Shown here: piece by piece, positions 2,529 to 55,339 of the stretch
How positions within the stretch are numbered: the stretch's first letter is position 1
Layout: every line of letters begins with the position of its first letter
IMG/VR virus record: IMGVR_UViG_3300036770_007539
Location: 1-64,000 of that record
Reading direction: 5' to 3' (one strand)
Length of the DNA stretch: 64,000 bases
Notes under the pieces: model-generated
Databases searched by the model: none
The model's input: only the letters and a program-made list of their open reading frames with translations
Told to the model about the DNA's origin: nothing
Made by a program: the position numbers and the translations under genes

Positions 2529-2557
2529 TTGACGGGAACGGTGGGGTGAGCTATGTT
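2529..2557 (+). promoter_or_regulatory. Sigma70-type early promoter
   Basis: TTGACG-N17-TATGTT followed by SD GAGGA and ATG at 2575. Confidence 0.75.
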
Positions 2558-2574: not shown

Positions 2575-5500
2575 ATGGAAACGAAGCATCAATATCAAGT
2601 TGGAATGATTATTCGACCGGCTGACGGTAGCAATTATCGAGGGGAGATTGTTTATGTTTCCAAGGATGAGGATGTAATTCGTCATCGTTGCTTGAAGACT
2701 GGAAAAATTTACGAGAAAAGTTATTTTGGATTTTTCTGTCGATATTGCACTCTGGAAGAATATGATGAGGCTGAAAAGCGAATCAAAGAAGAGAATGACG
2801 GCTATGACTCTCTATCAGGATAAGCAACAAATGGAAACTTGGACTGATTTAGATGATCAGCCTCTTCCAATTAACAAATTAGTAACTCCATTTCTTTCAG
2901 AGGAAATTCAGGAAAAATATCCTTATCCCTGGAAGAATGGAGAGCCCGTTCTTTATTTGGGAGAAGTTGTTGGCATGAAAGGTCATGGAATTTTTGTTGG
3001 CAATGATGGATTAGTTCGATTCGGATATCATTTAGATTCTTTTAAAATCATTCCAGAAGAAGAGCTATGAGTCTAGAAATAAAAGATAAGTTTTTTGATT
3101 ATCTTACTAAAGATGGTTTCTTTGAAGAAGGAAATATTAAAGATTTTATTTTCTTTGCTTACGAAGATACCATTGGTATATTATACAGCAATCCAGCTTT
3201 AAGTTCAGCCCATAATTGCAACCAATGTCAAGATGAAATTTTGGCATTTGCTCTAAGGGGTCCGTCCAAAGATATTCCTCGTTATTTCTCTGTGGGAGTC
3301 GAGGCATCAATCTTTGCTAAGATTAAGTCTGGATGGCGAGACTCTAAAGGATTTAATTTAAAAAAGGTAATATGGCTTTGAAACATGAAACAATTAAAGA
3401 TTTAATAGAAACTGTTCATTCTAAAGTTTTAGAATTAGGCGTTGGTAATTGCAAAGTTATTTCAACGGATAATCCTTATACTTTGCAAGTAGGATTTACA
3501 ATAGCAAGTGATGCAGAGACAGAGGAACATAGCATCAAGCTTACTAAATTAAAACTTGAACCGCTTTGGCATAAACATTTTGACACTCCGATTAATCGTG
3601 GTAAGCTAGCCGAAGTTTTAGAATCTGGAACCATGCCAACCTGTTAAAAGTTTTTAACAATGATCAAATCTCAATCCGAAGAAAATATGCTAGTTAAAAT
3701 TGTTGAAGAAAACGTTGAGTTAAAATCAAAAGTCTCTTCTTTAGAAAAAGAAAACGAACAATTACGGGCTGCTTTGCTTTGGTACGTTGAAAACGACGAG
3801 ACTAATGAAACCGCTTATAACGAGCCTTGGTTAAAAGGTAAGCGAAAAGCAATGAAGCTACTTGGAATTTCAGAAGATGACGAGTAAAGATATTCAAATT
3901 TTAAAAAGCTGGCAACCATTTAAAATTATTCCAGCCAAGCAATTGGAGCCAAGTTTAGCTCCCGATCTTTATTATGTAGTGGCAGAGGCTCCAACTTTTG
4001 ATTCTTATATTGCTTTTGAGGGATATTTGAATCAATGTGAGCTAGCATGTTCTGCTTTAAATAACAGAGTTTCAACTTCGCTTGCTTATCATGTTCAAAA
4101 AAGTTTAACAGAAAGATTATCATGAGCGTATTAAACGGACCTTCCGAGGGAACTTGGTCAGTTATGGCTGGGAAATGGCTTGAAGAACGGGACCAAGCTA
4201 AGCAAGAATTATATGAAGCAAAGCTAGAAATTGATCGATTGAAATCTGTTATTAAAAATCTAGAAGATTCTTTGGCAGTTAGTTCAGGAAAGAATTATTG
4301 AAAATGGAAAACGAATGGACAACTTACGAATGTCGAGGCTGCGGTCGGCATGAAGAAGCTCATTATAGTTCATTGCCTTGCGATTGGTCACGAATCGAAA
4401 GAATTGATGGACCAAACGGCATTTGTCCTGCTTGCGTTCATGACTTACTAGATGATGTTCTTAATCGACTTCGTGAAGATGGTTATGAAAACGCACATGT
4501 TGTACAAGTCTCAGGCTCAAAGTGATAGGATAGAACCATGGAAACCAAGAAGAGTACTTACAAGGTATATATCGGAGACACCATTTCGGGCTCATCCGAT
4601 ATGCGGTACTATAAGACTCTGGCTGCGGCAGAGCGGAGATTTAACGATCTCAGCCGGAGTTTCCGCAGGAACGGTCATAACAACGTAATTATGGCTGAGA
4701 ACAACACGGTCATCCGATTCTCCTAAGTGCAAACTTCAGGTTCAAAGTGATAGTGTAGAATTATGGAAAACGAATGGATTACCAGCGAAACCGGAACCCG
4801 AACTTTCCGCCATGAGGGCTGGGAGCTAACGGTTTTTGCACATTGTTCTCATCAGATTGATATTTCTGCGCCAAATTCAGATGTAGAAATAGATGTAACG
4901 TCAGAAGGTATTAGTTGTTTTGGTGAGGAGTCAAGCTTCTACTCCTTTTCCGGAGTTCGGTTCACTATTCCTTGGAGAATTATTGAAGAAATTTTAAAAT
5001 TTAAGGCAAGCCAAAATGACGCCCGATGACATTGTAGATTTGAAATGTCGAATCAAAGAACTTGAAGAATTAAATAAAATAGAGAAAATTATGAATCGTT
5101 ACATTCTTAAAAAAGAAATTGTTAATCGTAATGGAATTGTTGTAACAACTTATTTTTGGAATGACGGCAGTAGAAGCGTTGATTCTTCTTGTCATTGTTT
5201 TGGAATTTCGTTTAGAACTCATTCAAATGATAACTGCCTTAATCGAAAATGACCTCCTCTAAAAAACTTTCAACCAGATCCGATGGCGAACGAGAAAGAG
5301 CCAAGCATATCATTTCTCGTTTACGAGGCTGTATTGATGGATTAGAAATAGGTTTGAGAGATTACTCTGCTCCTATCGGGCTTGAAGCGGGAGAAGCAAT
5401 CACTCAAACATCTATTGAACTAGATGCTTATATGCGAGCCGAACAAGATCAAAAGCAATTGCTAAAAATTAAACAAGCCTCAAAAGATTTTATAGAAGTT

Positions 5501-5581
5501 TACGAAAGAATTAGCGATGATAATAATTGGGGATCTTTAGGAGACGTTGAAGATCAATTGAAAGAAGAATTGATAAAATAA
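2575..5581 (+). other. Cluster of about 12 small hypothetical early ORFs, including a 59-aa ORF at 4122-4301 missing from the track
   Basis: Abutting or ATGA-overlapping ORFs of 59-114 aa; 4122-4301 translates MSVLNGPSEGTWSVMAGKWLEERDQAKQ... Confidence 0.7.
4502..4770 (+). repeat. Duplicated ~40-bp promoter/start cassette (4502-4545 and 4727-4770)
   Basis: GTACAAgtcTCAGGcTCAAAGTGATAGgaTAGAAccATGGAAA vs GTGCAAactTCAGGtTCAAAGTGATAGtgTAGAAttATGGAAA; extended -10 (TGnTAGgaT / TGnTAGtgT) lies 6 nt before ATG. Confidence 0.75.
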
Positions 5582-5606
5582 ACCATCAATTATCTGACAT
5601 AATTGC

Positions 5607-6368
5607 ATGTCATATATATATAGACTTGTCGCAGGACCAGATCCTATTAATGTTTCAGCAAGATTGCCTGCCGGATTTTCGTATACTGGCTTTTGGAGCA
5701 CCTCAAAAACCGAAACTGAAAATTTAATAAATGCACATTTGGAGTTTGTAAGTGATTATATGGGTGGCGGCGCATACCCGTGGTCTGATGAACTTACAGT
5801 TCTTACTACGGACTTATCAAATGTAGAAACGGTTGATGAATACGAAAAATATCGTACTGGACCATATCAGCCTGATTTTGATTCTTCTGAAATTTTTGTA
5901 ATAAAAATTAAGGATCTATCTAAAATTACAAAAGAGCCTTGGGATTTTTGGAAGTACGGTAGGAAATTTTATTTTCATCGAGATGATGATCCACAGACCG
6001 AAGCTAGATTAAAAACATATGAAAAAATAAAAGAACTTTCTTTAAAAGAAGATCTTTCTGAAAACGATATCAATTCACTGAACTTGTCCCTAAGAGAACT
6101 AAGGGCGCTCGAACAACAAAATCTGGATCTTGCAGTTGCTCATCCAGATAAGAATCAAAAAGAAAAATCTTTATATGTGGCAGAAGATAATAAGGAGAAC
6201 AATGATAGGCTTGAGCAGCTAATTAACAGATTAATACAAAATAAAAACAATATCTCAAAAGCTTTTTTGCATGAAAAATTTCAAAAAACGTTATCAGCTG
6301 AAGATATTGAAAAAAAAGCAATTTATTTTTATTTTCTTTGCAAAACGTCCTTCTTAAAAAGATCATGA
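5607..6368 (+). CDS. Hypothetical protein, leaderless-type start, C-terminal helix motif
   Basis: 253-aa ORF; AATTATCTGACAT-N6-ATG with no SD; ends IEKKAIYFYFLCKTS. Confidence 0.7.
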   Translation: MSYIYRLVAGPDPINVSARLPAGFSYTGFWSTSKTETENLINAHLEFVSDYMGGGAYPWSDELTVLTTDLSNVETVDEYEKYRTGPYQPDFDSSEIFVIKIKDLSKITKEPWDFWKYGRKFYFHRDDDPQTEARLKTYEKIKELSLKEDLSENDINSLNLSLRELRALEQQNLDLAVAHPDKNQKEKSLYVAEDNKENNDRLEQLINRLIQNKNNISKAFLHEKFQKTLSAEDIEKKAIYFYFLCKTSFLKRS

Positions 6369-6909
6369 AATTAAATATTGAAGAATTATCCCGTGATAAA
6401 AACAAATCATTAAGCTCTCAGCCAATAATTAAATCCGGCTCCAACAAAGGCTTTAGACAGATTGAGAAAAATGGAAACTGGATCTATTTAGATGGCTATG
6501 ATTACCATTGCCGTCAACAAGAAAAATCCATTCATTTTAATTACGTTAAAACATTAATTAATTTAGGCTTCCGAATCGGATCTTGTGATTTGGATGGCGT
6601 AAAATCTTTTTATATTTTCAAAAGTAAGGAAACAAATCCATGAGCGATAACGAAAAATATTGGCAAGAACGTCGAGCCGATTTACAATTCTGCCTAGATA
6701 ATAATCTAGTTTTTAAAATTACTCATCAAGACTTAGAACAAGAGAACATCTTTCTCAAAGAAGAAAGGCAAAGATTAATTAAAAAATTAGAAGAAATAGA
6801 AAATCTCTCTAAATATGCCTGGGAACAAGTGGATCGCAACCCAGAAGAAGCAAAAGAACTATTTAAAATGATTTTTACAAAAAGCAAATGAACCCAGGAG
6901 AAAATATAC

Positions 6910-7509
6910 ATGACTTGCATTGCCGCATTAGTTGAAAACAATACAGTTTATATGGGAGGCGATTCTGCTGGAATTGCCGGATTATCTATTACCGTTCGCT
7001 CTGATGAAAAAGTTTTTATTAATGGTCCATTTATCATTGGAATTACTGGATCGTTCAGAATGTCCGATCTCCTGAGGTATAAACTCGACCCACCAAAACA
7101 AACCGTTCATCGAGATGATCGAGCTTATCTTGTTACCGATTTTGTTGATAGTCTGAGAAAATGTTTCTCTGCCAATGGTTTTGGAGATAAAGATGCTACC
7201 GTTGGAGGGACTTTCCTCCTAGGATATAAAGGAACACTGTATTCCGTTCAAAAGGATTATCAAATTGGAATTCCCAGCACCCAATATGATGCCGCTGGTT
7301 GCGGAGCAGATTTAGCTCTAGGTTCTCTTCATTCTACAGCTAAACTTAATCTTAAGCCAGAACAGCGCATTACTATGGCTTTAGAAGCTGCTAGTACCTT
7401 TAGCGCAGGAGTTTCTCCGCCATTCTTGGTTATGAAACAAGAATATAAAGATCCGGAAGCACCAAAGAAAAAATCACAGCCTGCCGCCCCAAAGAAAAAG
7501 AAAAAATAA
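6910..7509 (+). CDS. HslV/proteasome beta-type N-terminal threonine protease, paralog 1, Lys-rich tail
   Basis: M-T(1)CIAA...GGDS...DEK(33)VF...GITGS...AGCGA; tail APKKKSQPAAPKKKKK. Confidence 0.8.
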   Translation: MTCIAALVENNTVYMGGDSAGIAGLSITVRSDEKVFINGPFIIGITGSFRMSDLLRYKLDPPKQTVHRDDRAYLVTDFVDSLRKCFSANGFGDKDATVGGTFLLGYKGTLYSVQKDYQIGIPSTQYDAAGCGADLALGSLHSTAKLNLKPEQRITMALEAASTFSAGVSPPFLVMKQEYKDPEAPKKKSQPAAPKKKKK

Positions 7510-7601
7510 ATAATTAACATAACCGCCAATATACATTGCAATTATTTTGCATATACTTACGGCGCAAGAGGTAAGTCAACAGCAAACCCAAAAGGAGCTT
7601 C

Positions 7602-8273
7602 ATGACTGCTATCTCCGGAGTATCGATAAATAACACAGTGTATATCGGCGGTGATTCCGCTGGAATTTCTGGTCTTTCTGTAACAATTCGATCTGATGAA
7701 AAGGTCTTTACAGTTGGACCATTTTTATTTGGAATCGCTGGCAGCTTTAGAATGGGAAACATTCTTCGTTACAAATTCAAAGCTCCCAAACAAAAACCAA
7801 ATCAAACCGATATGGCTTATTTGGTAACTGACTTCGTAGATTGTTTACGTGCATATTTTGCAGCCAATGGATTTGGAGACAAAGATGCTACCATTGGAGG
7901 AAACTTTTTGCTTGGGTACAAAGGCAATCTTTATAACATTGATGCTGATTTTCAAGTAGGAATTCCCAGCACTCAATACGATGCCATTGGTTGCGGAGCA
8001 GAATTAGCATTGGGATCTTTGCATACCACTTCGCAATTTGATATTACCCCAGAGGAAAGACTTCGTTTATCATTGGATGCGGCAAGCAAATTCAATGCAG
8101 GCGTAGCTCCTCCATTTGTTATTCTTTCTCAAAAATACGATCCTAAAAAAGAAAAACTAGAAGCTAAAGCAAAAGCCAAGGCAAAAAGCAAAGAACCCAA
8201 AGCCAAAGCAAAATCCAAAGCTAAAATTGAAGTAACAATGGAAAAACAAGCTTCGGCAAAAAAGAAAAAATAA
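7602..8273 (+). CDS. HslV/proteasome beta-type threonine protease, paralog 2, Lys/Ala-rich tail
   Basis: M-T(1)AISG...GGDS...DEKVF...GIAGS...IGCGA; highly similar to the preceding ORF; tail KAKAKAKAKSKEPKAKAKSKAK...AKKKK. Confidence 0.8.
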   Translation: MTAISGVSINNTVYIGGDSAGISGLSVTIRSDEKVFTVGPFLFGIAGSFRMGNILRYKFKAPKQKPNQTDMAYLVTDFVDCLRAYFAANGFGDKDATIGGNFLLGYKGNLYNIDADFQVGIPSTQYDAIGCGAELALGSLHTTSQFDITPEERLRLSLDAASKFNAGVAPPFVILSQKYDPKKEKLEAKAKAKAKSKEPKAKAKSKAKIEVTMEKQASAKKKK

Positions 8274-8296
8274 TTCGTTCTTAATTAAAAAGATTC

Positions 8297-8331
8297 AGCC
8301 CCTTGACAGGATTTGTTCGAGGGGCTATTCT
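8297..8331 (+). promoter_or_regulatory. Sigma70 promoter overlapping a terminator-like hairpin
   Basis: TTGACA(8303)-N17-TATTCT inside the AGCCCCT...AGGGGCT inverted repeat. Confidence 0.75.
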
Positions 8332-8547
8332 CTTTGTGGCGGCAGAGGATTGTGCTGCAAGGAGTTAAAAAATGACCTACGAAGATCATCAGAAATTTAA
8401 ATGGCTTTCTATTTATGGGGCATATGTCGCAGTTCAATGCCATCAAAGAATGATAGATGGTCATGGCGGCGATTTGTCAGATGTTATTGAAAGCATTAAA
8501 GCAGATGCAGAAGCTGTTGCCGATTGGGCACTTGAAGGAGAAGCAAA

Positions 8548-8997
8548 ATGACTTGGGTAATTAAAGAAACTTATTCCGATTCTAAAAAGAAAATTTCCAT
8601 TTACTGTTGCAATGTCCATTGTACCAAATGGAGCACGAGTCAATCGGAAGCCTTTAAATTCAAAGGTAAAGATTCTGCTTATAAAGCTTTGAATCGTTTA
8701 AAGAGTCTTGGTTCCAATGCAAAATTGGTTCGCCTCAAGCCAAAGCAAGAATTAGTTCATCCTGAGAATGGTACGGTGTTTCTGGACTTGACAATGCCAA
8801 CTCCAGAACCTAATATCGTGGTGTGCGTCTATGAGGAGCTTGGTGAAGATTTTGGAGAAGAAGCAGGAGATAATGTTTATTATGTCTGTACGGTAAACTC
8901 CATGTCTACCAAAAGCGAAGATATTTTCTGCGAGCTTTCCGAGTATCATCAATTTTTGCGAGAAGGCAAGATTCAAGTAATCTGGGAACCGACATGA
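8548..8997 (+). CDS. Hypothetical protein, MTW-family member 1
   Basis: MTWVIK...SQSEAFKF...; shares N- and C-terminal domains with 8994-9452. Confidence 0.7.
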   Translation: MTWVIKETYSDSKKKISIYCCNVHCTKWSTSQSEAFKFKGKDSAYKALNRLKSLGSNAKLVRLKPKQELVHPENGTVFLDLTMPTPEPNIVVCVYEELGEDFGEEAGDNVYYVCTVNSMSTKSEDIFCELSEYHQFLREGKIQVIWEPT

Positions 8998-9452
8998 CTT
9001 GGATATTAAAAAATAAAAACGGCTATTATTACAAATCAGGAATGGATATTATTCCTTTGAATTTTACCAATGTTAAATCTTCTGCATCACAAAAAGAAGC
9101 ATGTCGTTTCGAGCAAAAAACAAATGCCGAACTGACAAAAAATTGTCTTAATGCCAGCTTTGTTAAAGCAAACGCTGAGGAATACAAAGTTATCAAACTT
9201 AAATCGCCCGAAGATAGCGAGTCTTTGTTGCCGCAAGTAGATACTGTATTTTACGATGATGTTTTTGGAATTCCGCACCTTGTATGTAAGGTTAACAAAG
9301 ATCCTAAAAACTCTTCTGAGTATGAAATTTGGACGGCATGTTCTGCTAACAAAAATTATTATTGGGGCAGTGATAAAGATTGGCGCACCTTTTTAAATAA
9401 AGGCAGAATTAAAATTTTGTGGGAGCGGGATCAAAATGACTTGGATTGTTAA
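8994..9452 (+). CDS. Hypothetical protein, MTW-family member 2
   Basis: MTWILK...SQKEACRF...; ATGA overlap with the previous gene. Confidence 0.7.
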   Translation: MTWILKNKNGYYYKSGMDIIPLNFTNVKSSASQKEACRFEQKTNAELTKNCLNASFVKANAEEYKVIKLKSPEDSESLLPQVDTVFYDDVFGIPHLVCKVNKDPKNSSEYEIWTACSANKNYYWGSDKDWRTFLNKGRIKILWERDQNDLDC

Positions 9453-10137
9453 ATTAAGCGATGGAAGATATTACGTTAGGAAATATCTTGAAGCTCCGGG
9501 ATCTGTTCCTGAAATTAGCTTTACTTACCATCAAGCCGAGGCTTTCAAATTTCCTAGCGCAATAGATGCTCATTCTACTAAAGAATGGCTTGAATCTACT
9601 CATTCAAAAGCTGAAGTTATTAAATTTTCGGATAAAATTATGAACAAAAAAGAATTAAATCGAAAAGCTGCAATTGCCGTAATTAGTGACCTCATTGAAA
9701 AGATTTCTCTCTCATATAGAGATCAAGTCTCTCAAGCATTAGATGTTTTGGGAGCCACTACAGACGAAAGAGTTTCCGTTTTAGGCAAGCTAGATAGCGC
9801 AGTTGAAGGCGCTCACAAATTATTTAGGCGAACAACACATGTTGATTCTCAAACTCTTTTAGCGAAAATTGATAGCTGTCTTTTTGAGGATGACTGGGAC
9901 TTTGATAGCGTGATCATTAATCACGATGATTTCATTGAGTTGTTTGTAAAAAATCTTGACAAAGTTCGTAGCAGGTATAATGAAAACTCATCAGATGATG
10001 AGGTTCTAAAGCATCTAGAACCGATGAAAACTGGTCGTGGCGGAACCTTGAGGAATCGTCATGGAAATGTCAGTAAAACAATTTATTGGAGCTACGAAAT
10101 AGATCGTGGCGAAGTTCTTGGCTGTAAGAAATTTTGA
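9436..10137 (+). CDS. Hypothetical protein, MTW-family member 3 (different C-terminal domain)
   Basis: MTWIVK...HQAEAFKF...; unrelated C-terminal ~165 aa. Confidence 0.7.
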   Translation: MTWIVKLSDGRYYVRKYLEAPGSVPEISFTYHQAEAFKFPSAIDAHSTKEWLESTHSKAEVIKFSDKIMNKKELNRKAAIAVISDLIEKISLSYRDQVSQALDVLGATTDERVSVLGKLDSAVEGAHKLFRRTTHVDSQTLLAKIDSCLFEDDWDFDSVIINHDDFIELFVKNLDKVRSRYNENSSDDEVLKHLEPMKTGRGGTLRNRHGNVSKTIYWSYEIDRGEVLGCKKF

Positions 10138-10140
10138 ATC

Positions 10141-13100
10141 ATGAAGCAAAAACATATCTATATGTGGTTTGATGGCGATGTTAAGCGTCACTACTTTTCC
10201 AGCAAGCTAACTTATAACAAATGGTTAAGGGAGTTTGTTTCTGAATTAATGAGCGATCCAACATTTCCATCTTTCTACGGGAATCTAAAAAACAAATCAA
10301 GGAAAGATGTGATGAGTTATTTTTCTTCAAATCTTTACCTAGAAAAAATTAAATTAGATCAATGACCACCAGCACAAGGCAAGAAAATCATGAAAATCTC
10401 TACAGAAATTAATAAGATTAAAAAGCGAATCAAATCAAGAATTGACGATCATGTTAATTATTTAATGATTGGAATTGAATTCGTTAAAGAATCTAAAGAA
10501 TGGCATGTTACCCCTTGCTTTGAAGGGGGAGGGGATGGTCATACATCATATATCGCTTTGGATGACCCCGGAATTCTGAACCCCGGACCATTTCAAGGAG
10601 TTGGCGAAACGCTACCAAAAGCTATTGCTAATATTAAAAAAGCACTGGATAACGCTGAGCAAAAAGATTATTGTTTTTACCGTTGGTGATTAACCATGAG
10701 TTATTCCTGCAAAAATAGAGGTCCCCGCAGTTACGAATGGATTTGCCTCTGCCCCGACAAAGGCAAATCAGCTAAAGAAACCATTCCAAATCTTTGGAAT
10801 AGTTATGTTCAAAATTTAATCATCTCCCTTCAAAAGAAAGTCGATTCTCTAACCGAGGAACAAGCATTGAAAGAATTGACAAAAATAGAAGACGAAGCAA
10901 ATCTTCGATTCCAACTATGGAGAGATTCATGTTAAAAAGTAAATATGACGCAGAAATTAATGCCAGAGAACGACTTCAGCTTTGGAATTGGATTAACGAA
11001 TATGTTGTGGCTTGCGGAGGAGATCCTTCAGACGCTACAGTTAGCAATCGTCGAATGGAAGCAGTTTCTAGAATTGAAGGAACGATTTTTGAAATCGCCA
11101 ATCGTCATTACAAGGCTTGCCGATCATGATTCCTGGTAATAATAATTGGCTTGCTTCGCCAGGAAATTATAATCAATTAGATGCTATAGTTGGTCGCATG
11201 GTGCAAGATTTGTTTAAATTTGAAAGGCAGCCCTTTACATTTAAAACAAAGATGGCTATGCAAGCTATAGTTGACCGAGCCATATCAGATGCTCGTCAAT
11301 ATGGAATTGACCCTTCTCAAATAATGGAAGTAGCAAACAGAATTACAGTAATAGAAAGATAGTAGAATGATTAAAAACCGTTGCATGTTTGGTAATGGCT
11401 CTTGCCCTAAAGAACAAGAATGGCATTGTCATGTTTGGTTAAAAGATTGGTCAAGCGGCGACAGATCGCTTTGCGAAGAACATGCTGATAGCTATATGAA
11501 AGCCAATATTCGAGCAGGTCATGGAACTTTTGCAGTAAAGGTAAAAAAATGAGCATTGATTCTGAACTACAGCTAATTAAAGAACTATTCGATATTGAAT
11601 TTGGAGTTACCGTCAAAGGGGATGAAATCAAAGGCTATAATAATGGTAAAATCTATCTTGATTCTACCAATTGCATTGAACTATCTGAGGCTTTTCTCAA
11701 GATTTCTAATTTCTTAAAAAGCTCTCATCCTAATTACGATCCAGTAAAAGCTCAAAAGGATGATATGGAACGACTGTTTCCAAATCCAAAAGAGCTAGAA
11801 AGCCTCCTTGCTCCATTTATTCAAGAAAGCGATTATATCAGCGATCCTGCTCATGCGGAGCCCGTTTTTAATTATACAACTTGCATTAAACGAGTAGTTG
11901 CATCTCTCTTAAAACAACAAGAACTAAATCAAGAAATTGCTTGTGGTCATTCTAAAGGCGACCTTTGGACAGAACTTCACGCAAATGCCAAACCATATTG
12001 CACAATCTGTAGGCTCTACGAAGAAATTGAAGGAAATGCAGCTGCCGCAGTAAAATGGAGAGAAATTGTAGAATCAGCTTTAGGAATAGAGCCAGATCCA
12101 GAAAATCACACCCCAGAATGGGCGCATGAAGTTATTTTAAACATTAGGGAAATTGGAAACAAGAAATGAATAATCACGCCGGTTGGAGTCAAGATGGTCG
12201 CTGTGTTTGGTGCTTTTCCAATGATGCATCATCTCCTTGCATTGATCCTACTTCCGATGAGTTTAGAATGAAGGTTATTAATCTAGAGCAAGCCTTGAAA
12301 CAAGCTCAAGATGAATGTAAGTGGTGGCAGAAAAAACATTGGGAAGATGGTCTGACCATGCGTTATATCGGACGCAGAGAAGGTGCCCATGAAATGCAAA
12401 GGAAGATCCGAGATTTAGTTTGGGCGGCTCGGTTTGATGAATTTCTAGATTCTGAAATTGGTGCTATAGAATACAAAGAAGAACATGCAGTGAATTGCAA
12501 ATGGTGGCGAGATTGGCATGATTGCAGTTGCGGAGCTTTTGACAAACAACAAAAGGACTCTGAGAAAATTCAAACCGGATTTGACAAATATCTTGAAGAA
12601 CAACTTGAAGACCCAGAATTTGCAAAAGAATATCAAAAAGCCAAATTGAAAATAAGCCATGAGTGAACATTCTAAATTAGTTAACTCTCCAGAATGGCAA
12701 GAGATGCAAGAAAATGCTGACAAAGCTCAAAAAGCATTTGAAGCAGAATGTGATCGAGCCTGGAACTCTTTAGATCAAGAAACCAAGCTAAAACTATTCT
12801 GTGCTGTTTGTACTCGCCTTTATAAAGGAGAGCTAGAGGACAAGGGTAGTTATCGCCATGTTTTGTATGAGGTCTTTGGATTTGGTCCAGAGGCTTATGG
12901 AACTGCTCAAGCCGCAGGATTTCTGGCGCTTCACAATGCTATTATTGACGAAGATCAAGAACTGGCTACTGCTAAAAAACTAGCAGAGCTTGCCAAAGAA
13001 TATAATATTCCAAAAGAACAACTAGAAGGCTTGCTTGGCTGGAATCTTGTCAATCTTTATCTTTAACTATGACCCAATTTAAAAATATAAATATTTCTTG

Positions 13101-30412: not shown

Positions 30413-30485
30413 TGGGGAGTCGCCTAGTGGTTATGGCAGCGGACTTTGAATCCGCCATTCGTGAGTTCGAATCTCACCTCCCCTG
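30413..30485 (+). tRNA. tRNA-Gln (anticodon TTG)
   Basis: Cloverleaf: anticodon arm GCGGA-CTTTGAA-TCCGC, T arm GTGAG-TTCGAAT-CTCAC; U1:U72 mismatch; CCA not encoded. Confidence 0.9.
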
Positions 30486-30507
30486 CTAACTTTCTGCAAT
30501 TAAAGCG

Positions 30508-32371: not shown

Positions 32372-32459
32372 AGAAGGGTGCCAGAGTGGTCGATCGGGCT
32401 TGATTGGAAATCAAGTGTACGTGAATAGCGTACCGGGGGTTCGAATCCCCCCTCTTCTG
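32372..32459 (+). tRNA. tRNA-Ser (anticodon GGA)
   Basis: CTTGA-TTGGAAA-TCAAG anticodon arm, long variable arm GTACG..CGTAC, GGGGG-TTCGAAT-CCCCC, G73; CCA not encoded. Confidence 0.92.
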
Positions 32460-33287
32460 CTAATTTTTAAGTAAATTATTAATTGTTACTGCATCAACAA
32501 AGAATGACATATTTGGAACTGCCGGTCTAAAAAAAGAACATATTCCAATTAATTTCCCATCTATGTCAAAAGCTCCGCCTCCAGAGTTGCCCATATAAAT
32601 CGGAGCTGTAATATGAACTAATTTTTGTTGATATCCTGTGGGATTTATTTCAGTTCTAAAACCTGAAATAATTCCAGTAAAATATGTAAATTCAACTCTT
32701 GCAGGATGCCCAACAATATGAACTTTTTCACCAATTTTTCCATTAGATCCAGATACTTCAACAAAACTATCTGAGCTGTAATCTAATGTTTTTAAAATCA
32801 TAATATCGTTATTATTGTCAAATTTTATTATTTTTGCTTTTTTAGTTGGTGGATTTTCTAAATTATAAGAATTTGATATTTCACCAAAAGTTTTAAATGA
32901 AACTTCTAACCCAAGCATATCATCAAGGTTAGGAGTGTAACTTAATGCTTTAATTATTTTAATTAAATCTTCTAATGTTTTTTCTTCTTTTTTAATAATT
33001 TCTTCGCTAATTTTAGCATCTTCTGGTTCTGGAATTAAGCTTTCTCCACAGTGCCTTGCGCTAATAATTATTTCTGGAGAAATAAAAACTCCTCCACAAA
33101 AAGTAGAATATTTTTTATTTTCTTCTGACGGGCGTAAAAACGCAACAGAGCTATTCTCTAATTTATAAACTAGATTTGTATTTTGCTGTTGCTCTATAGA
33201 TGCAACTTTTACATGCGACGGAATTGAACAACAACCAAGTAAGAAAAACAAACAAAAAAGAAAAGATATCTTGTTTTTCAAAGCCAC
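32460..33287 (-). CDS. Trypsin-like (S1) serine protease, probable lipoprotein
   Basis: Lipobox LLGC; CGGVFI, SARHC, NDIMIL, GNSGG; start may be TTG at 33281 after AGGAG. Confidence 0.85.
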   Translation of the reverse strand: MALKNKISFLFCLFFLLGCCSIPSHVKVASIEQQQNTNLVYKLENSSVAFLRPSEENKKYSTFCGGVFISPEIIISARHCGESLIPEPEDAKISEEIIKKEEKTLEDLIKIIKALSYTPNLDDMLGLEVSFKTFGEISNSYNLENPPTKKAKIIKFDNNNDIMILKTLDYSSDSFVEVSGSNGKIGEKVHIVGHPARVEFTYFTGIISGFRTEINPTGYQQKLVHITAPIYMGNSGGGAFDIDGKLIGICSFFRPAVPNMSFFVDAVTINNLLKN

Positions 33288-33798: not shown

Positions 33799-34827
33799 AT
33801 GATTAAGACCGATGTAGTTACCGATCTGCTATGGGGAGATAATGGTAAAGGAAAAATTACTCATTCGCTAATGAAAAATAATAAATATGATTATTGTCTG
33901 AAATTAGCAGGTTCTGCTAACGCAGGACATACCATTTATCATAATGGTGATAAATTTGTCACTCATTTGCTTCCAGCTGGAATATTTTTTAATATTCCCT
34001 CGATTATTGGCAGAAACTGCTTGGTTCATCCAGAAACTTTGTTTGCAGAAATTGAACAGCTGCAAAATCAATTTAATAAACATGAAGATCTGAAATCTAT
34101 TGATATTCAATCTTTAGTGAAGATTGATAAAAATACTTGTATTATTACAGACGATCATATTTACGAAGATTCTAAAGATACTATTATTGGATCAACTAAA
34201 CGTGGGGTCGGTCCTGCTGCTCGTGATAAATATGCTAGAACGGCAGTTCAAGTTCAAAATGTTGATTCATTAAAGGGATTCGTTGTAGATTTTCCAGAAA
34301 TAATCTATCAAGAACAAAATGCTTCTATCCTCGGAGAAGGAGCTCAAGGTTTTTATTTGGATGTTAATTTTGGTGATTATCCTTATGTAACTAGCACTCA
34401 CTGCTCTTTAGCAGCTGTTCCGTTGAGCGGAATTCCAATTCGATCAATTGACCGAATTTTTGGAGCAATTAAAATTTATGCTACTTATGTTGGAAAAAAA
34501 TCCTTTCAAGGAGAAGATTCTAGATTCGACATGATTGCTGAGGCAGGGTCTGAGTTTGGTTCTACTACTGGAAGAAAAAGACAAGTCAACTGGTTAGACT
34601 TAGACAAGTTAATTTATGCTATTAAGGCTAATGATGTAACTGATTTGATTATTTCTAAAATTGATATTTTTAGAAAATTAAATATCTTTGTCTTAGTTAA
34701 AGATAATAAAATCATTGAGTTTAATAACGAAAAAAATATGAAAACATACATTCATGATGTCTTGTACGATTCAAGATGTAATTCCATTAAGAATATAGTG
34801 TTTTCAGAATCTCCACATGACATCTGA
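33799..34827 (+). CDS. purA: Adenylosuccinate synthetase (short form)
   Basis: WGDNGKGK, NAGHT, IGSTKRGVGP, GEGAQG, YPYVTS, EFGSTTGRKR, SKID. Confidence 0.9.
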   Translation: MIKTDVVTDLLWGDNGKGKITHSLMKNNKYDYCLKLAGSANAGHTIYHNGDKFVTHLLPAGIFFNIPSIIGRNCLVHPETLFAEIEQLQNQFNKHEDLKSIDIQSLVKIDKNTCIITDDHIYEDSKDTIIGSTKRGVGPAARDKYARTAVQVQNVDSLKGFVVDFPEIIYQEQNASILGEGAQGFYLDVNFGDYPYVTSTHCSLAAVPLSGIPIRSIDRIFGAIKIYATYVGKKSFQGEDSRFDMIAEAGSEFGSTTGRKRQVNWLDLDKLIYAIKANDVTDLIISKIDIFRKLNIFVLVKDNKIIEFNNEKNMKTYIHDVLYDSRCNSIKNIVFSESPHDI

Positions 34828-39052: not shown

Positions 39053-39125
39053 GTCGTTTTAGCTCAGCTAGCAGAGCACCTCATTGGTAATGAGGAGGTC
39101 ATGGGTGCAACTCCCATAAACGGCT
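39053..39125 (+). tRNA. tRNA-Thr (anticodon GGT), non-canonical D and T loops
   Basis: GTCGTTT/AAACGGC acceptor stem, CCTCA-TTGGTAA-TGAGG, T loop TGCAACT, D loop AGCTAGCA. Confidence 0.85.
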
Positions 39126-39877
39126 CAAAGTTCTAGTTCTTCTTCTAGTTTCATTAAAACTAGCCTAGACATTCCAAGATTGCTTTTTTCTTTGTCTAGA
39201 ACGACATAGATAAATAGATTATCTTGTTTTAATACGAAGGTAACTATGTGATAGTTGTTATTTAAGTTAATAACAATATCTTCAATTTTATCTTTAATGT
39301 TTAAGTTAGTTAAGAACTTCTTGTGAGATTTAACTACTTCAACCATGTAAGCGCAATATAATTCAAATTCAGAGGATTTATCTGAGTTTTGAATTATAGG
39401 CATTCCAGTTGTTATGTCTACAATGGAAGCGGCTAGTACGCCATCAAGCTCCATAATGGTGTTAAATTTTTCTTTTATGCTTTTAAAATAAGAAGAGCTT
39501 GGTTTTCTTGATGTAGAGCCTGATGAAGATTGTTCAGCTTCTGGCTCTAAGGCATAATTTTTAATTTTTCCCTCATCTAACAAGACGTAATATTCTAGAA
39601 TAAGTTCGGTCCATAATTTGTTAATTGACTCTACTTCTGGTAAAACATTGGGAGAAACTTTAAAAGTTCCATCCTCCCAAGTTAACATTTCATAAAAAGC
39701 ATCAATTCCAAAATTATTGGTAGTGGTAGCGTGAAGAACTCTTCCAGTAGAAACCCAAACTTCACCAGAAAATTTCTTATGAGTTATAGTTATATGAGCA
39801 GATGCTTGACTTAGTATGTAGAATTGAATTATATCTACCAGTGTCTCGGTAGAAATCTCGCCTTGAAATTTATTCAT
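39125..39877 (-). CDS. DUF4388 (PatA_N-like) domain fused to a roadblock/LC7-like domain
   Basis: FQGEI...LVDIIQ...GEVWVSTGRVLHA...AFYEMLTWEDGTF; C-terminal LDGVLAASIVDITTGM...IEDIVI...LFIYVVLDKEKSNLGMSRL. Confidence 0.8.
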   Translation of the reverse strand: MNKFQGEISTETLVDIIQFYILSQASAHITITHKKFSGEVWVSTGRVLHATTTNNFGIDAFYEMLTWEDGTFKVSPNVLPEVESINKLWTELILEYYVLLDEGKIKNYALEPEAEQSSSGSTSRKPSSSYFKSIKEKFNTIMELDGVLAASIVDITTGMPIIQNSDKSSEFELYCAYMVEVVKSHKKFLTNLNIKDKIEDIVINLNNNYHIVTFVLKQDNLFIYVVLDKEKSNLGMSRLVLMKLEEELEL

Positions 39878-53073: not shown

Positions 53074-53670
53074 ATGGACGATGAATTTCAATTGGGACCT
53101 CATAGGTTAGACGCTGAAATATATAAAAATTTATTTGAAAGCCGTTCAATTTTCCTATTAGGAGATATTCACGTTCAATCCGCTGCTAATCTAGCGGCTC
53201 AATTGTTATGGCTCAATGCAATCAAGCAAGATGAGATTACTGTTTATATCAATTCTCAAGGAGGTGATATTGATAGTGGTCTTTTTACAATTTACGATAC
53301 TATTCAATGGATAACCTCTCCAGTATCTACCGTTTGTATTGGAGAGGCTTATTCTAGTGCAGGCTACATATTAGCCTCTGGTTCTAGAGGAAAGAGATAC
53401 GCCTATCCTCATTCTAAAATTATGATTCATGGGGTACAAACTTCTGAGCTATCTGGAACTCAAGAGGAAATTGAGGCTGAAAGCAAAAGAATAAAATTAT
53501 TAAATCAATCTTTAATGGAAGTGATGGCAAGGCATTCAAAGCAATCTTTTTCCAAAGTTAAAAGAGATTTTAAAAAAGATAAATATTTTACAGCAGAAGA
53601 AGCTTTAAAATACGGTCTAATTGATGAAGTTATTGAGCCTACAAAAAAGATTCCACCTCTAAAAAGATAG
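53074..53670 (+). CDS. clpP: ATP-dependent Clp protease proteolytic subunit
   Basis: YINSQGG, CIGEAYSSA (Ser), IMIH (His), KDKYFTAEEALKYGLID (Asp). Confidence 0.9.
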   Translation: MDDEFQLGPHRLDAEIYKNLFESRSIFLLGDIHVQSAANLAAQLLWLNAIKQDEITVYINSQGGDIDSGLFTIYDTIQWITSPVSTVCIGEAYSSAGYILASGSRGKRYAYPHSKIMIHGVQTSELSGTQEEIEAESKRIKLLNQSLMEVMARHSKQSFSKVKRDFKKDKYFTAEEALKYGLIDEVIEPTKKIPPLKR

Positions 53671-53689: not shown

Positions 53690-55339
53690 ATGGATAAATT
53701 AGCCAGAAAAAAATCATCCGATCCAAAGCAAGAAGCTTTGCGTCAAGAAAAACAGGATTGGAATGAGCAAACAAGTGAATTAATTAGCGAGCTTATTTCT
53801 TTAAAGCGTGGATTAAATGGAAAAGGAGACTCTTCAGAGGGGTTGCCTCCTTCTTCTATTAAAGACCCAATTCCGCCTCAAATAGGAGCTTATTTAAATG
53901 AGGTAGCCTCTAGCGCAGCCAAAGTAATAGAAGAGGCTCGCAACATTATTAACAAGCAAGAAAACTACTCTTCTTCTAGAAAAAAAAGAAGCATGTCAAA
54001 GGAAGAAGAGGAAATAATTAAATTGGCGGGATTTATTTCTGAGGCTTCGTGGGCAGGCTCTCGCCTTCTGGCTAGATATTGGACATTGAGAAATTTACCA
54101 GAAAAACAAAAAGCCTTTGTTTTGGATTTAATGTATTCATTAACAGATATTAATGATAAATTAAAAATTTTTGAAGAAAAATTAATAGAGCCCAATCAAA
54201 AAAGCTTAGCAAAAGCTTTTATAGATAGCTTGGCAGTATTATCCTTGTATAGGAATAATATTCTTAACAAAACCAATTATTTTTTAGGTAGACCTGCATT
54301 ACCAAATATTAGTCACAGTGAGAGACCAGAAAAACCAGAAAAACCAGAAAAACCAGAAAAACCAGCTCGGCAGCAAGCACTTACAGATGAATCTAAAAGA
54401 AGTGTAGAAGAAAATCTATCAGCTGCGCAGCAGAAGGAAAAGGATGAGGCAAAACAAACTTTTCTTAAAATGGATGCGGATTTGGGATATGCAGAAAGAT
54501 TAAATAAATTTACAAAAGAAATAAAAGGTAAGACAATACTAGTTTCAAAAAAAGGAACTCCTGATGATTTCAATAAAAAATTGCAAGCAATAATTGCTGA
54601 AAGAGACAAAATTAAATCAAGTATTTCTAGGCGACAACCCATGTATAATATAATTCTTTCTATTGGGTCATTTAAAAACCAATATGAGTCATTAATTAGT
54701 TATTTTATACAAGATTTTTCTATTAATGGAACCGAAGAAGACGCATGGGACTCTTTAGGCAAAGACACATCAAAAACTCCATTTAACGAAATGGAATATG
54801 AAATTGATCCTGTTTTGAATTCAACTACATTTGCTAATATTTATATGAAGCTTCCACTTTCTTCTGATGCGTTTGCTACGATTAACATGGATATTGATGA
54901 AGAAGAAGGTGCGCCAGAAAGTAATGAGTCAAATAAAAATACAGAAGATAGTCGGCAATTGAGTCTTTTCGTTAGCGATGGCTCATCTTTTGTTAAAGAC
55001 GCGGGTTTCTTCAGAAGATTTATTAGAGAAAAAATTTTACAATTTAAAACACCAACAGCAACAGAAATTGAACAAAAAAGAGCACTTCAAGCATCAAAAG
55101 ACTTGAGAGTTTCAATAGATTCTTTTTTAGATTTATTAGAAAATTCAAATACGTCTATAAATTCTATTATAGAAGAATTAAATCAATTAACTAAAAATTT
55201 TAAACTTCTTGGTTCTATTATGAGGAATCTCGGAGAATCATTTAGAATCCTATCTTGGGGAGAAGGTGTTAAAGAAATTTCAAAAGAAGAAATGACCGCC
55301 TATGATAGAGTTTTGAACTCCATACCGGATAAAATTTAA
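53690..55339 (+). CDS. Large helical hypothetical protein, possibly virion-associated
   Basis: AATATTTTGCTAT-N6-ATG; K-x-A motifs (MDKLA, IIKLAG, FVKDAG); PEK repeats. Confidence 0.65.
   Translation: MDKLARKKSSDPKQEALRQEKQDWNEQTSELISELISLKRGLNGKGDSSEGLPPSSIKDPIPPQIGAYLNEVASSAAKVIEEARNIINKQENYSSSRKKRSMSKEEEEIIKLAGFISEASWAGSRLLARYWTLRNLPEKQKAFVLDLMYSLTDINDKLKIFEEKLIEPNQKSLAKAFIDSLAVLSLYRNNILNKTNYFLGRPALPNISHSERPEKPEKPEKPEKPARQQALTDESKRSVEENLSAAQQKEKDEAKQTFLKMDADLGYAERLNKFTKEIKGKTILVSKKGTPDDFNKKLQAIIAERDKIKSSISRRQPMYNIILSIGSFKNQYESLISYFIQDFSINGTEEDAWDSLGKDTSKTPFNEMEYEIDPVLNSTTFANIYMKLPLSSDAFATINMDIDEEEGAPESNESNKNTEDSRQLSLFVSDGSSFVKDAGFFRRFIREKILQFKTPTATEIEQKRALQASKDLRVSIDSFLDLLENSNTSINSIIEELNQLTKNFKLLGSIMRNLGESFRILSWGEGVKEISKEEMTAYDRVLNSIPDKI
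54326..54365 (+). repeat. 9-bp tandem repeat (CCAGAAAAA)x4 encoding PEK
   Basis: Directly visible in the sequence. Confidence 0.9.

What the first reader, a model, noticed from the sequence alone, without database searches (positions are those of the whole stretch)
6910..8273. Tandem HslV/proteasome-beta paralogs with histone-like basic tails and apparently different promoters
Seen: two near-duplicate Thr proteases, both keeping Thr1/Asp17/Lys33. Each ends in a different Lys-rich tail (APKKKSQPAAPKKKKK; KAKAKAKAKSKEPKAKAKSKAK...AKKKK). The second has its own copy of the putative late motif (7540). No HslU AAA+ partner occurs in the window. Inference: DNA- or nucleoid-tethered proteasome-like rings, possibly heteromeric or temporally switched, that degrade DNA-bound host proteins.
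Basis: partly seen in the sequence, partly recalled or inferred. Interest (0 to 1): 0.6.

Follow-up and report, generated by a model that had tools for sequence, protein, structure and literature searches.

The report
Tandem lysine-tailed phage proteasome-like proteases
A roughly 300-kb bacteriophage carries two adjacent, diverged copies of a proteasome-like threonine protease, each ending in a lysine-rich tail; such tails occur throughout its phage relatives but in none of 80 bacterial relatives read, and their function is still untested.

Summary
ORFs 6910-7509 (199 aa) and 7602-8273 (223 aa) are 65% identical paralogs. They hit PHROG phrog_1040 ("peptidase HslV family"). The paralog 2 model matches BPH (Z 21.4) and HslV (Z 19-20), with residue 2 on the mature Thr1. 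Thr2, Asp18 and Lys34 are invariant in 68 relatives.

- **Tails are clade-wide.** Of 185 metagenomic relatives, 131 have tails of at least 10 aa, 125 of these with net charge +4 or more, none negative. Composition is conserved, sequence is not. None of 80 bacterial homologs (39-51% identity) has such a tail.
- **The pair is conserved.** It recurs in two other phage contigs. Both copies are under purifying selection. Paralog 2 sits on a long branch and has changed family-conserved residues (C3A, T46A, C85Y).
- **No unfoldase on the contig.** No HslU/Clp-type unfoldase was found in the 301-kb contig (about 71% complete), although it carries ClpP.

The "late motif" is not supported. The spacer holds a conserved sigma-70-like element, no terminator separates the genes, and a conserved terminator follows the second.

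DNA tethering, heteromeric rings and temporal switching remain untested. This is a new variant (polybasic-tailed, duplicated) of a known but functionally uncharacterised phage proteasome-homolog family, probably AAH.

The parts
2529..2557 (+). Candidate sigma-70-type promoter (TTGACG-17-TATGTT). It sits at the head of the + strand run of small genes that ends with the protease pair.
   Evidence: Read in the 2444-2761 intergenic sequence. All called genes from 2762 to 8273 are on the + strand. Consensus match only; not tested.
6896..6900 (+). Ribosome-binding site (AGGAG) of paralog 1, 9 nt before the ATG.
   Evidence: Sequence read directly.
6910..7509 (+). Paralog 1 (P0001, 199 aa): proteasome-like N-terminal-Thr protease with a short tail. 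The core is roughly residues 1-176.
   Evidence: phrog_1040 E 6.5e-24. It carries T2, D18 and K34. It is 91-98% aa identical to orthologs in L006 and L007, while 4-fold sites are 41-62% identical.
7438..7506 (+). Polybasic tail of paralog 1 (23 aa, 9 Lys, net +6).
7510..7601 (+). Conserved 92-nt spacer. It holds a promoter-like block at 7530-7557 (TATACA-16-TATACT), the conserved word GGTAAGTCAA at 7570-7579, and the RBS AAGGAG at 7592-7597.
   Evidence: Three-phage alignment, 81% mean column identity with fully conserved blocks. No significant RNA fold, z -0.73. Sigma-70 scan match 9 of 12.
7602..8273 (+). Paralog 2 (P0002, 223 aa): a diverged copy with a long tail. It keeps T2, D18 and K34 but has C3A, T46A, C85Y and A157S at sites conserved in the rest of the family.
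   Evidence: phrog_1040 E 2.2e-25. AF2 model pLDDT 87.8. BPH Z 21.4, HslV Z 19-20. Long branch in the tree. Site changes.
8130..8270 (+). Polybasic tail of paralog 2 (47 aa, 19 Lys, net +13). It has an AK-repeat stretch predicted helical (residues 181-196), a short conserved K(I/V)E(V/I)T..KQ patch, and a terminal KKKK.
8297..8337 (+). Hairpin plus T-rich run, an intrinsic-terminator-like site that closes the unit. The stem also contains a TTGACA with TATTCT 17 nt downstream (8303-8331).
   Evidence: Hairpin conserved after paralog 2 in all three phages. Fold z-scores are -1.8 (window), -4.6 (L006) and -3.5 (L007). Promoter scan 10 of 12.

Best explanation
These are two paralogous subunits of a phage-encoded, self-compartmentalising N-terminal-threonine protease of the proteasome/HslV/BPH superfamily. 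Most likely they belong to the 'AAH' group of proteasome homologs, which phages spread.

How it most likely works:
- Methionine removal exposes Thr1 as the nucleophile (inferred).
- By homology, the subunits assemble into stacked rings (inferred, not shown).
- The C-termini carry disordered Lys/Ala/Pro-rich tails. By homology these point away from the ring, so each particle would carry a dozen or more polycationic arms.
- I take the tails to be polyanion anchors. They would concentrate the protease on nucleic acid (host nucleoid, phage DNA or RNA) or on polyphosphate. There it would cleave host or phage proteins during the early, host-takeover phase.

How the genes are arranged and expressed:
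- The genes sit at the 3' end of an early-looking + strand operon of small genes.
- They are probably co-transcribed. Paralog 2 has an extra conserved internal sigma-70-like promoter, and a shared terminator follows it.
- The duplication is specific to this phage lineage. Paralog 2 has diverged at residues next to the active-site loops and has a tail twice as long. That suggests a second cleavage specificity or a second target, either in separate rings or in mixed ones.

No phage unfoldase is present on the contig. The particle therefore either works without one, as is thought for BPH, or borrows a host AAA+ partner.
For: Shown:
- Family and fold: phrog_1040 E about 1e-24. AF2 pLDDT 87.8. Foldseek best hit BPH 5ovs at E 3.5e-12, then HslV, then 20S beta. 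VIA-align gives BPH Z 21.4 (rmsd 2.4 A over 172 residues) and HslV Z 19.4-19.7, with model residue 2 on chain residue 1.
- Catalytic residues: M1, T2, D18 and K34 are invariant in 68 sequences.
- Tails: K+R is 42% in tails against 7.5% in cores. Pooled tail composition is K 36%, A 10%, P 10%. 125 of 131 tails of 10 aa or more carry net +4 or more, and none of 185 is net negative. None of 80 bacterial homologs has a basic tail. The tail of the Ochrobactrum jumbo phage vB_OspM_OC homolog is also K/P/A-rich.
- Selection: aa identity 88-98% against 4-fold-site identity 41-64% among three phages, for both copies.
- Pair, spacer and terminator are conserved in L006 and L007.
- Lineage-specific duplication with a long paralog 2 branch, and changed conserved sites.
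- No AAA_2 unfoldase in 301 kb.

Context:
- Single-copy tailed relatives in a 491-kb and a 74-kb contig sit next to NAD-dependent DNA ligase, UvrD helicase and tRNA-repair genes.

From the literature:
- C-termini of proteasome homologs face away from the rings and are proposed interaction sites. AAH and PPH are spread by phages (PMC8665760).
- Lys-rich low-complexity tails bind DNA in Ku, TopA and HupB, and AlgP associates with polyphosphate granules.
Against: - No activity, oligomer, DNA-binding or expression data exist for any member. No RNA run was listed.
- Sequence models of HslV and the proteasome do not reach their cut-offs: Pfam PF00227 scores 15.4 bits against 22.4, and NCBIfam has nothing near its cut-offs. 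HMMER against PDB sequences finds nothing convincing.
- The polycation target could as well be RNA or ribosomes, polyphosphate, anionic membrane or acidic proteins.
- Vibrio-phage relatives carry acidic C-terminal extensions instead. The C-terminus is therefore a generally variable appendage, not necessarily a DNA anchor.
- The contig is about 71% complete, so an unfoldase could lie in the missing part. A relative (L019) has a classical AAA gene 3.7 kb away.
- 'Early' timing rests only on consensus-like promoters and on the character of neighbouring genes.
Confidence: 0.45

Rival explanations
1. Host-unfoldase-dependent protease. The phage rings dock onto the host's HslU or another host AAA+ unfoldase and redirect ATP-dependent degradation. 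The basic tails would serve docking, activation or substrate capture rather than nucleic-acid binding.
For: - The fold is nearly as close to HslV as to BPH (Z 19-20 against 21.4).
- The contig also encodes ClpP (53074-53670, E 4.7e-54) with no Clp ATPase. This suggests a general strategy of supplying protease cores to host unfoldases.
- Jumbo phages are known to carry ClpP or ClpS for this purpose (PMC7824862).
Against: - In HslUV it is HslU's C-terminal tail that inserts into HslV, not the reverse (established knowledge). Nothing lysine-rich is known to be involved.
- The closest solved structure, BPH, has no known ATPase partner.
- The host is unknown, so the presence of a host HslU cannot be checked.
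Confidence: 0.2
2. The tails are non-specific 'entropic bristles' or charge compensators. They would keep an acidic ring particle soluble or prevent premature ring stacking, with no targeting role. The duplicate would be a simple dosage or backup copy.
For: - Cores are mildly acidic (median net -3) and tails basic (median +7).
- The tail sequence is not conserved, only its composition.
- Tail length varies continuously from 2 to 66 residues.
Against: - 80 bacterial homologs with similar cores manage without tails.
- The paralog 2 tail has a conserved internal patch and a predicted helix.
- Paralog 2 changed residues that are invariant elsewhere, near the active-site loops, and both copies are under purifying selection. 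Neither fits a plain backup copy.
Confidence: 0.15
3. The tailed proteases are packaged with DNA into the capsid (basic tail as DNA-affinity tag) and injected, acting on host defence proteins at entry. Alternatively they act in head maturation.
For: Basic internal proteins that travel with DNA are known in T4-like phages (established knowledge). This contig has T4-like genes such as rIIA.
Against: - The genes lie in an operon of small unknown genes headed by a sigma-70-like promoter, far from any structural module, and next to nucleotide-metabolism and replication genes.
- Relatives sit beside DNA ligase and helicase, not head genes.
- A ring of roughly 250 kDa could not pass through a tail tube.
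Confidence: 0.07
4. Paralog 2 is a catalytically altered or regulatory subunit, like an inactive beta or an alpha-like subunit. It would co-assemble with paralog 1 into an obligate heteromeric ring. The separate promoter would then set stoichiometry, not timing.
For: - The pair is conserved in all three lineages where context is readable.
- Paralog 2 is on a long branch with changes at C3, T46 and C85.
- The paralogous beta subunits of eukaryotic 20S proteasomes are a precedent (established knowledge).
Against: - Paralog 2 keeps T2, D18 and K34.
- MTA N-termini also occur in many single-copy actinobacterial homologs, so C3A is not in itself disabling.
- The complex job gave no verdict and counts neither way.
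Confidence: 0.13

Closest known systems
BPH (betaproteobacterial proteasome homolog; PDB 5ovs, 5ovt, 5ovu)
   Same: Best structural match: Z 21.4, rmsd 2.4 A over 172 residues, about 20% identity. It is compact, has an N-terminal Thr and no propeptide, and no cognate ATPase is known.
   Different: Only about 20% identity. BPH is a cellular protein without a polybasic tail. Its heptameric double ring has not been shown for the phage proteins.
HslV (ClpQ) of the HslUV protease
   Same: Same fold (Z 19-20). Same Thr1/Asp17/Lys33 pattern, exposed by Met removal as in E. coli HslV. PHROG and JGI annotations call the family 'HslV'.
   Different: No HslU gene on the contig. The HslV and proteasome sequence models stay below their cut-offs. 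The GSG motif reads GCG here. A polybasic C-terminal tail is added.
AAH / PPH / CPH: proteasome homologs of phages and their hosts (Fuchs, Alva, Lupas 2021, PMC8665760)
   Same: - A group I compact homolog found in phages.
- The bacterial relatives I found (Frankia, Streptomyces, Actinoplanes, Mesorhizobium and other Alphaproteobacteria, Paenibacillus and other Firmicutes) match the distribution reported for AAH.
- The function of this group is unknown.
   Different: - The paper does not describe lysine-rich tails: 'lysine' and 'basic' each occur 0 times in its text.
- PPH is only about 140 aa, while these cores are about 176 aa.
Two-copy HslV-family genes in other large phages (Aeromonas phage 2L372X, Salmonella phage pSal-SNUABM-04)
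   Same: Two 'peptidase HslV family' genes are adjacent in 2L372X. Two copies without HslU are reported in pSal-SNUABM-04 (PMC7823757).
   Different: Those belong to other branches of the family. The homologs of cultured phages that I read for tails (Moorella MTATph1, Geobacillus E3, Ecwhy_1) have none. Tails in the 2L372X pair and in pSal-SNUABM-04 were not examined.
Lys/Ala/Pro-rich low-complexity tails of bacterial DNA-binding proteins (mycobacterial Ku PAKKA repeats, actinobacterial TopA, HupB, AlgP)
   Same: Same composition class (K 36%, A 10%, P 10%) and same C-terminal position. Those tails bind DNA or associate with polyphosphate granules (PMC3553676, PMC7398561, PMC5676037, PMC9239181).
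   Different: There they are attached to DNA enzymes or nucleoid proteins, not to a protease. Binding has not been tested for these tails.

Membership tests
Proteasome/HslV/BPH superfamily (Ntn-hydrolase, proteasome-beta fold) | Proteasome-beta-type alpha-beta-beta-alpha sandwich fold | tested here: met
   AF2 pLDDT 87.8. Foldseek gives at least 500 PDB matches at E<=0.001, led by BPH, HslV and 20S beta. VIA-align Z 18-21 over about 170 residues.
Proteasome/HslV/BPH superfamily | N-terminal Thr nucleophile with Asp17 and Lys33 | tested here: met
   M1, T2, D18 and K34 are invariant in 68 sequences. Both paralogs and their orthologs keep them. Model residue 2 aligns to mature residue 1 of solved chains. 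Catalysis itself was not tested.
HslV proper (HslUV / ClpQY) | Match to curated HslV or proteasome sequence models above cut-off | tested here: not met
   PF00227 scores 15.4 bits against a cut-off of 22.4 for P0002, and gives no hit for P0001. NCBIfam has no HslV model hit, only 12-15 bits to proteasome-beta equivalogs with cut-offs of 192-224.
HslV proper (HslUV / ClpQY) | Cognate HslU AAA+ partner encoded alongside | tested here: not met
   No PF07724 match in 301 kb, while the control search found the family in 14 of 14 control genomes. The PF00004 hits are FtsK-like and IstB-like. The contig is about 71% complete, so absence from the full genome is not proven.
HslV proper / BPH | Double-ring oligomer (2x6 for HslV, 2x7 for BPH) | tested here: inconclusive
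   The only complex job (P0001 core with P0002 core) returned no verdict: score 0.30, mark 0.34.
PHROG phrog_1040 'peptidase HslV family' | Profile match | tested here: met
   E 6.5e-24 (P0001) and 2.2e-25 (P0002).
[quoted passage not shown] | Cluster membership by sequence; distribution in Actinobacteria, Alphaproteobacteria, Firmicutes and phages; compact group I architecture | tested here: inconclusive
   The distribution of bacterial relatives fits, and the compact fold ends after the last strand. The AAH representative sequence was not on hand for a direct comparison.
Histone-H1-like / PAKKA-type polybasic DNA-binding tails | Lys/Ala/Pro-rich, low-complexity, disordered composition | tested here: met
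   K 36%, A 10%, P 10% in tails. pLDDT falls to 49-65 over residues 201-223.
Histone-H1-like / PAKKA-type polybasic DNA-binding tails | Binds nucleic acid | not testable with these tools
   Needs EMSA or in-cell localisation.

The most novel reading that the evidence does not exclude
A whole clade of jumbo- and mega-phage proteasome homologs would have evolved histone-H1-like polycationic arms. These arms would park an unfoldase-independent protease ring on DNA, acting as a 'chromatin-clearing' protease that strips nucleoid or defence proteins off the host or phage genome. In this lineage the ring would have become heteromeric, with two active-site types. That would be a viral parallel to the subunit diversification of the eukaryotic proteasome.
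Probability: 0.1. Interest if true: 0.8.

Novelty: new variant of a known kind. Interest (0 to 1): 0.45.

Why it matters
- **The family is large and unexplained.** Proteasome homologs are widespread in large phages: more than 5,000 relatives in one metagenome search and 203 phage records. None has a known function.
- **The tails give a testable handle.** A polybasic tail marks the phage clade: 125 of 131 tails of 10 aa or more are strongly basic, against 0 of 80 bacterial homologs. That points to what the phage versions do differently, namely being brought to a polyanion.
- **A culturable test system exists.** Ochrobactrum phage vB_OspM_OC carries a K/P/A-rich tailed homolog.
- **The pair is a natural experiment.** The conserved, diverged tandem copies could show how specificity diversifies in a minimal proteasome.
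- **Caveat.** Without experiments this remains a well-documented sequence feature of unknown function.

Tried and rejected
- **Complex prediction.** P0001(1-180) with P0002(1-180) scored 0.30 against a mark of 0.34, so the tool gave no verdict. I do not use it as evidence either way.
- **RNA evidence for co-transcription.** No run was listed.
- **DNA similarity to known phages.** No match for 6000-9000.
- **HMMER against PDB sequences.** A single sequence gave only E 0.02-1 hits to 20S subunits. The family profile gave none at E<=0.01.
- **NCBIfam.** Nothing near the cut-offs.
- **Neighbouring genes.** PHROG and Pfam scans of ten neighbouring ORFs (5249-12666) found no family, so the neighbours say nothing about function.
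- **Atlas look-alike search with the tail alone.** Scores of 0.76 or less, uninformative. The same search for the 549-aa ORF after ClpP gave no usable hit (an earlier attempt did not complete).
No word of the 7510-7601 spacer recurs upstream of other genes. T4-type TATAAATA is absent from the spacer.
- **RNA structure in the spacer.** z -0.73, not significant.
- **T4 Gp23 Pfam search of the contig.** The control search also found nothing, so the result is uninformative.
- **Literature.** No paper pairs 'HslV-like' with phage. None was found on lysine-rich tails of phage proteasome homologs.
- **Not run.** The large representative-protein search was left out, because the word searches and family scans already placed the protein.
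- **Genetic code.** No code other than table 11 was needed.
Full report
**What the window is.** The window is the first 64 kb of a 301,007-bp IMG/VR viral contig, which CheckV estimates at about 71% complete. It has about 92% coding density and is mostly + strand. It has no DNA-level match among deposited phages. Genes in the window include rIIA, thymidylate synthase, RNA ligase, a helicase, an FtsK-like ATPase, a PurZ-like adenylosuccinate synthetase, topoisomerase IA and ClpP. It is therefore a large, uncultured tailed phage.

**The observation.**
- ORFs 6910-7509 (199 aa, P0001) and 7602-8273 (223 aa, P0002) exist as described. They are 65% identical over 182 residues. Each has a good ribosome-binding site.
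- Both match PHROG phrog_1040, 'peptidase HslV family', at E about 1e-24. Curated HslV and proteasome models stay below their cut-offs, and HMMER against PDB sequences is uninformative.
- Structure settles the fold. An AlphaFold2 model of P0002, built on 68 relatives, has mean pLDDT 87.8.
- Foldseek ranks BPH first (5ovs, E 3.5e-12), then HslV, then 20S beta subunits. VIA-align gives BPH Z 21.4 (rmsd 2.4 A, 172 residues) and E. coli HslV Z 19.4-19.7. In both, model residue 2 lies on residue 1 of the mature chains.
- M1, T2, D18 and K34 are invariant in the family alignment. The Thr1/Asp17/Lys33 claim is therefore correct at the sequence and model level. The nucleophile would be exposed by ordinary methionine removal (established knowledge). 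No propeptide is present.

**The tails are a property of the phage clade.**
- The first word search returned 1,046 relatives. Of the 121 read, 100 have at least 10 residues beyond the core, with a median of 20. K+R is 42% in tails against 7.5% in cores. Pooled tail composition is K 36%, A 10%, P 10%.
- A second search, seeded from a basal tail-less member, found 5,491 relatives. In the pooled 185 sequences, 131 have tails of 10 aa or more. Of these, 125 carry net +4 or more, and no tail is net negative. Even the shortest mostly end in xKxK.
- Sequence is not conserved; composition is.
- In the tree, basal members are short (175-182 aa) and derived ones longer.
- In contrast, none of 80 bacterial-genome homologs has a basic tail. 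These are 39-51% identical and come from Frankia, Streptomyces, Actinoplanes, Mesorhizobium, Paenibacillus, Dehalococcoidia and others.
- Among cultured phages, the Ochrobactrum jumbo phage vB_OspM_OC homolog has a K/P/A-rich tail. The Moorella, Geobacillus and Asteriusvirus homologs have none. Two Vibrio-phage homologs carry long acidic extensions.
- Within this contig the two proteins rank 3rd and about 5th of 366 ORFs for positive charge in the last 20 residues. The tails are therefore not a by-product of A-rich DNA.

**The pair.**
- The same arrangement occurs in two other metagenomic phage contigs, L006 and L007. A short-tailed copy starting MTC is followed, about 100 nt later, by a long-tailed copy starting MTA.
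- Among the three phages, core amino-acid identity is 88-98% while 4-fold-degenerate sites are only 41-64% identical. Both copies are therefore under purifying selection.
- In a core tree the paralog 2 sequences form one long-branched clade. It is nested in the same sub-clade as paralog 1, so the duplication is lineage-specific and paralog 2 evolved fast.
- Paralog 2 differs from the rest of the family at otherwise conserved positions: C3A (97% Cys elsewhere), T46A (100% Thr), C85Y (96% Cys), A157S, P61A and T65K.
- Position 3 is next to the nucleophile. Position 46 lies in the invariant G44-x-T46-G47-S48 loop. By my recollection of HslV and 20S motifs, this corresponds to the oxyanion and S1-pocket loop. 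That mapping is an inference and was not verified with a tool.
- C3A alone is not disabling, because many single-copy actinobacterial homologs also start MTA.
- The paralog 2 tail also has a predicted helix (residues 181-196, pLDDT 84-89) and a small conserved patch before the terminal KKKK.
- Two-copy HslV-family arrangements exist in other large phages, so duplication as such has precedent.

**Transcription.**
No word of the 7510-7601 spacer recurs before other genes. The intergenic word that is enriched before starts elsewhere in the contig (TGATATAG) is absent here.
- The spacer is nevertheless conserved in blocks across the three phages, with 81% mean column identity. It contains a -35-like (T/A)TAACA/TATACA, a -10-like TATACT/TATAAT/TATCAT after a conserved TTTGCA, a conserved GGTAAGTCAA, and the RBS.
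- The window's copy scores 9 of 12 to the sigma-70 consensus. On its own that is no better than chance in this AT-rich DNA.
- There is no terminator-like fold in the spacer, z -0.73. Right after paralog 2, however, all three phages have a strong hairpin plus T-run. In the window it lies at 8297-8337. The z-scores are -1.8, -4.6 and -3.5.
- Upstream, every called gene from 2762 to the pair is on the + strand, and a TTGACG-17-TATGTT match lies at 2529-2557.
- The simplest reading is one early-type operon ending in the pair, with an optional internal promoter for the second gene. That is not a temporal switch. No RNA data could be found.

**Partners.**
- No AAA_2 (HslU/Clp) domain occurs in the 301 kb. 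The two weak classical-AAA hits are an FtsK/SpoIIIE-like protein and an IstB/DnaC-like loader.
- The tailed Ochrobactrum phage also lacks AAA_2, as do the Moorella and Geobacillus phages. The Asteriusvirus phage has a 775-aa Clp-like ATPase.
- The window does encode ClpP (53074-53670, E 4.7e-54), again without a Clp ATPase.
- The phage thus supplies protease cores but no unfoldase on this contig. The closest solved relative, BPH, has no known ATPase either.
- Single-copy tailed relatives in a 491-kb and a 74-kb contig lie immediately upstream of NAD-dependent DNA ligase, near UvrD, PTH2 and Thg1. That is a nucleic-acid-metabolism neighbourhood, which is weak contextual support for a nucleic-acid-related site of action.

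**Comparison with what is known.**
- Fuchs, Alva and Lupas (PMC8665760) catalogued group I proteasome homologs (BPH, HslV, AAH, CPH, PPH). They showed that AAH and PPH are spread by phages, and noted that C-termini face away from the rings and could be interaction sites.
- The bacterial distribution I found fits AAH, but I could not compare directly with their representative.
- That paper does not mention lysine-rich or basic tails, and my literature searches found no description of them.
- Lys/Ala/Pro-rich tails are DNA-binding appendages in mycobacterial Ku, actinobacterial TopA and HupB. In AlgP they are linked to polyphosphate granules.

**Verdict.**
- The protease identity is well supported at the fold and active-site level. 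Membership of HslV proper is not supported: the sequence models fail and there is no HslU.
- The polybasic tail is a genuine, selected, phage-clade-specific feature, and the tandem diverged pair is conserved.
- The proposed mechanism (a polyanion-tethered ring protease acting early) is inference. I give the overall explanation 0.45.
- Heteromeric assembly and temporal switching are open. The only complex test gave no verdict.
- Novelty: a new variant of a known, functionally uncharacterised family. Interest is moderate at 0.45.
- No step needed referral.

Noticed in passing
window 33799-34827 (+): PurZ-like adenylosuccinate synthetase (phrog_1211 '2-aminooxy adenylosuccinate synthetase' E 1e-58; PF00709 E 2e-68). 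The phage may make 2-aminoadenine (Z) DNA. I did not look for companion genes such as DatZ or MazZ.
   Followed up: no
window 53074-53670 (+) and 53690-55339 (+): A ClpP serine protease (PF00574 E 4.7e-54) is followed 20 nt later by a 549-aa ORF. That ORF has no family, fold or look-alike hit and no Walker A motif that I could see by eye. There is no Clp ATPase in the contig.
   Followed up: partly
window 8548-8997, 8994-9452, 9436-10137 (+): Three tandem small ORFs lie directly after the protease pair. All start MTW(V/I)(I/L)K. The first two are 27% identical (E 7e-10). None has a family hit.
   Followed up: partly
window 8297-8337; L006 about 5696-5735; L007 about 3200-3240: The terminator-like hairpin has a stem that contains a TTGACA, with a -10-like hexamer in its T-rich tail. 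This looks like an overlapping terminator and promoter module. It is conserved in three phages with compensatory stem changes.
   Followed up: partly
contig (G000:C1) 100-200 kb; in window 30389, 32354, 47787: TGATATAG(T/A) is enriched in intergenic DNA. It lies 17-48 nt before many gene starts and just before tRNA-Gln and tRNA-Ser. It is a candidate phage promoter resembling an extended -10 element.
   Followed up: partly
contig G000:C1 about 270,000-293,000 (outside the window): A GC-richer block carries repeated TTGACAAG-N17-TAGTATG promoter-like units and GGGCGAGCC...GGCTCGCTCC hairpins. It is unlike the rest of the contig. It may be a special region or an assembly chimera.
   Followed up: no
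window 30413-30486, 32372-32460, 39053-39126 (+): Three tRNA genes: Gln(ttg), Ser(gga) and Thr(ggt).
   Followed up: no
L019 12312-13502 (+): In a 74-kb relative, a 396-aa classical AAA protein (PF00004) lies 3.7 kb downstream of the single-copy lysine-tailed homolog. It could be an unfoldase partner. No equivalent was found in this contig.
   Followed up: no
L018 and L019 (relatives, 491-kb and 74-kb contigs): The order UvrD helicase, PTH2, Thg1, HNH, tailed proteasome homolog, NAD-dependent DNA ligase is conserved. L018 also carries a PARP-domain protein, a SET-domain protein and a tRNA-synthetase-like gene nearby.
   Followed up: no
L015 1201-2064; L017 1201-2181 (Vibrio phages): Homologs of the same protease family carry 110-150-aa strongly acidic C-terminal extensions, the opposite charge to the tails studied here.
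   Followed up: partly
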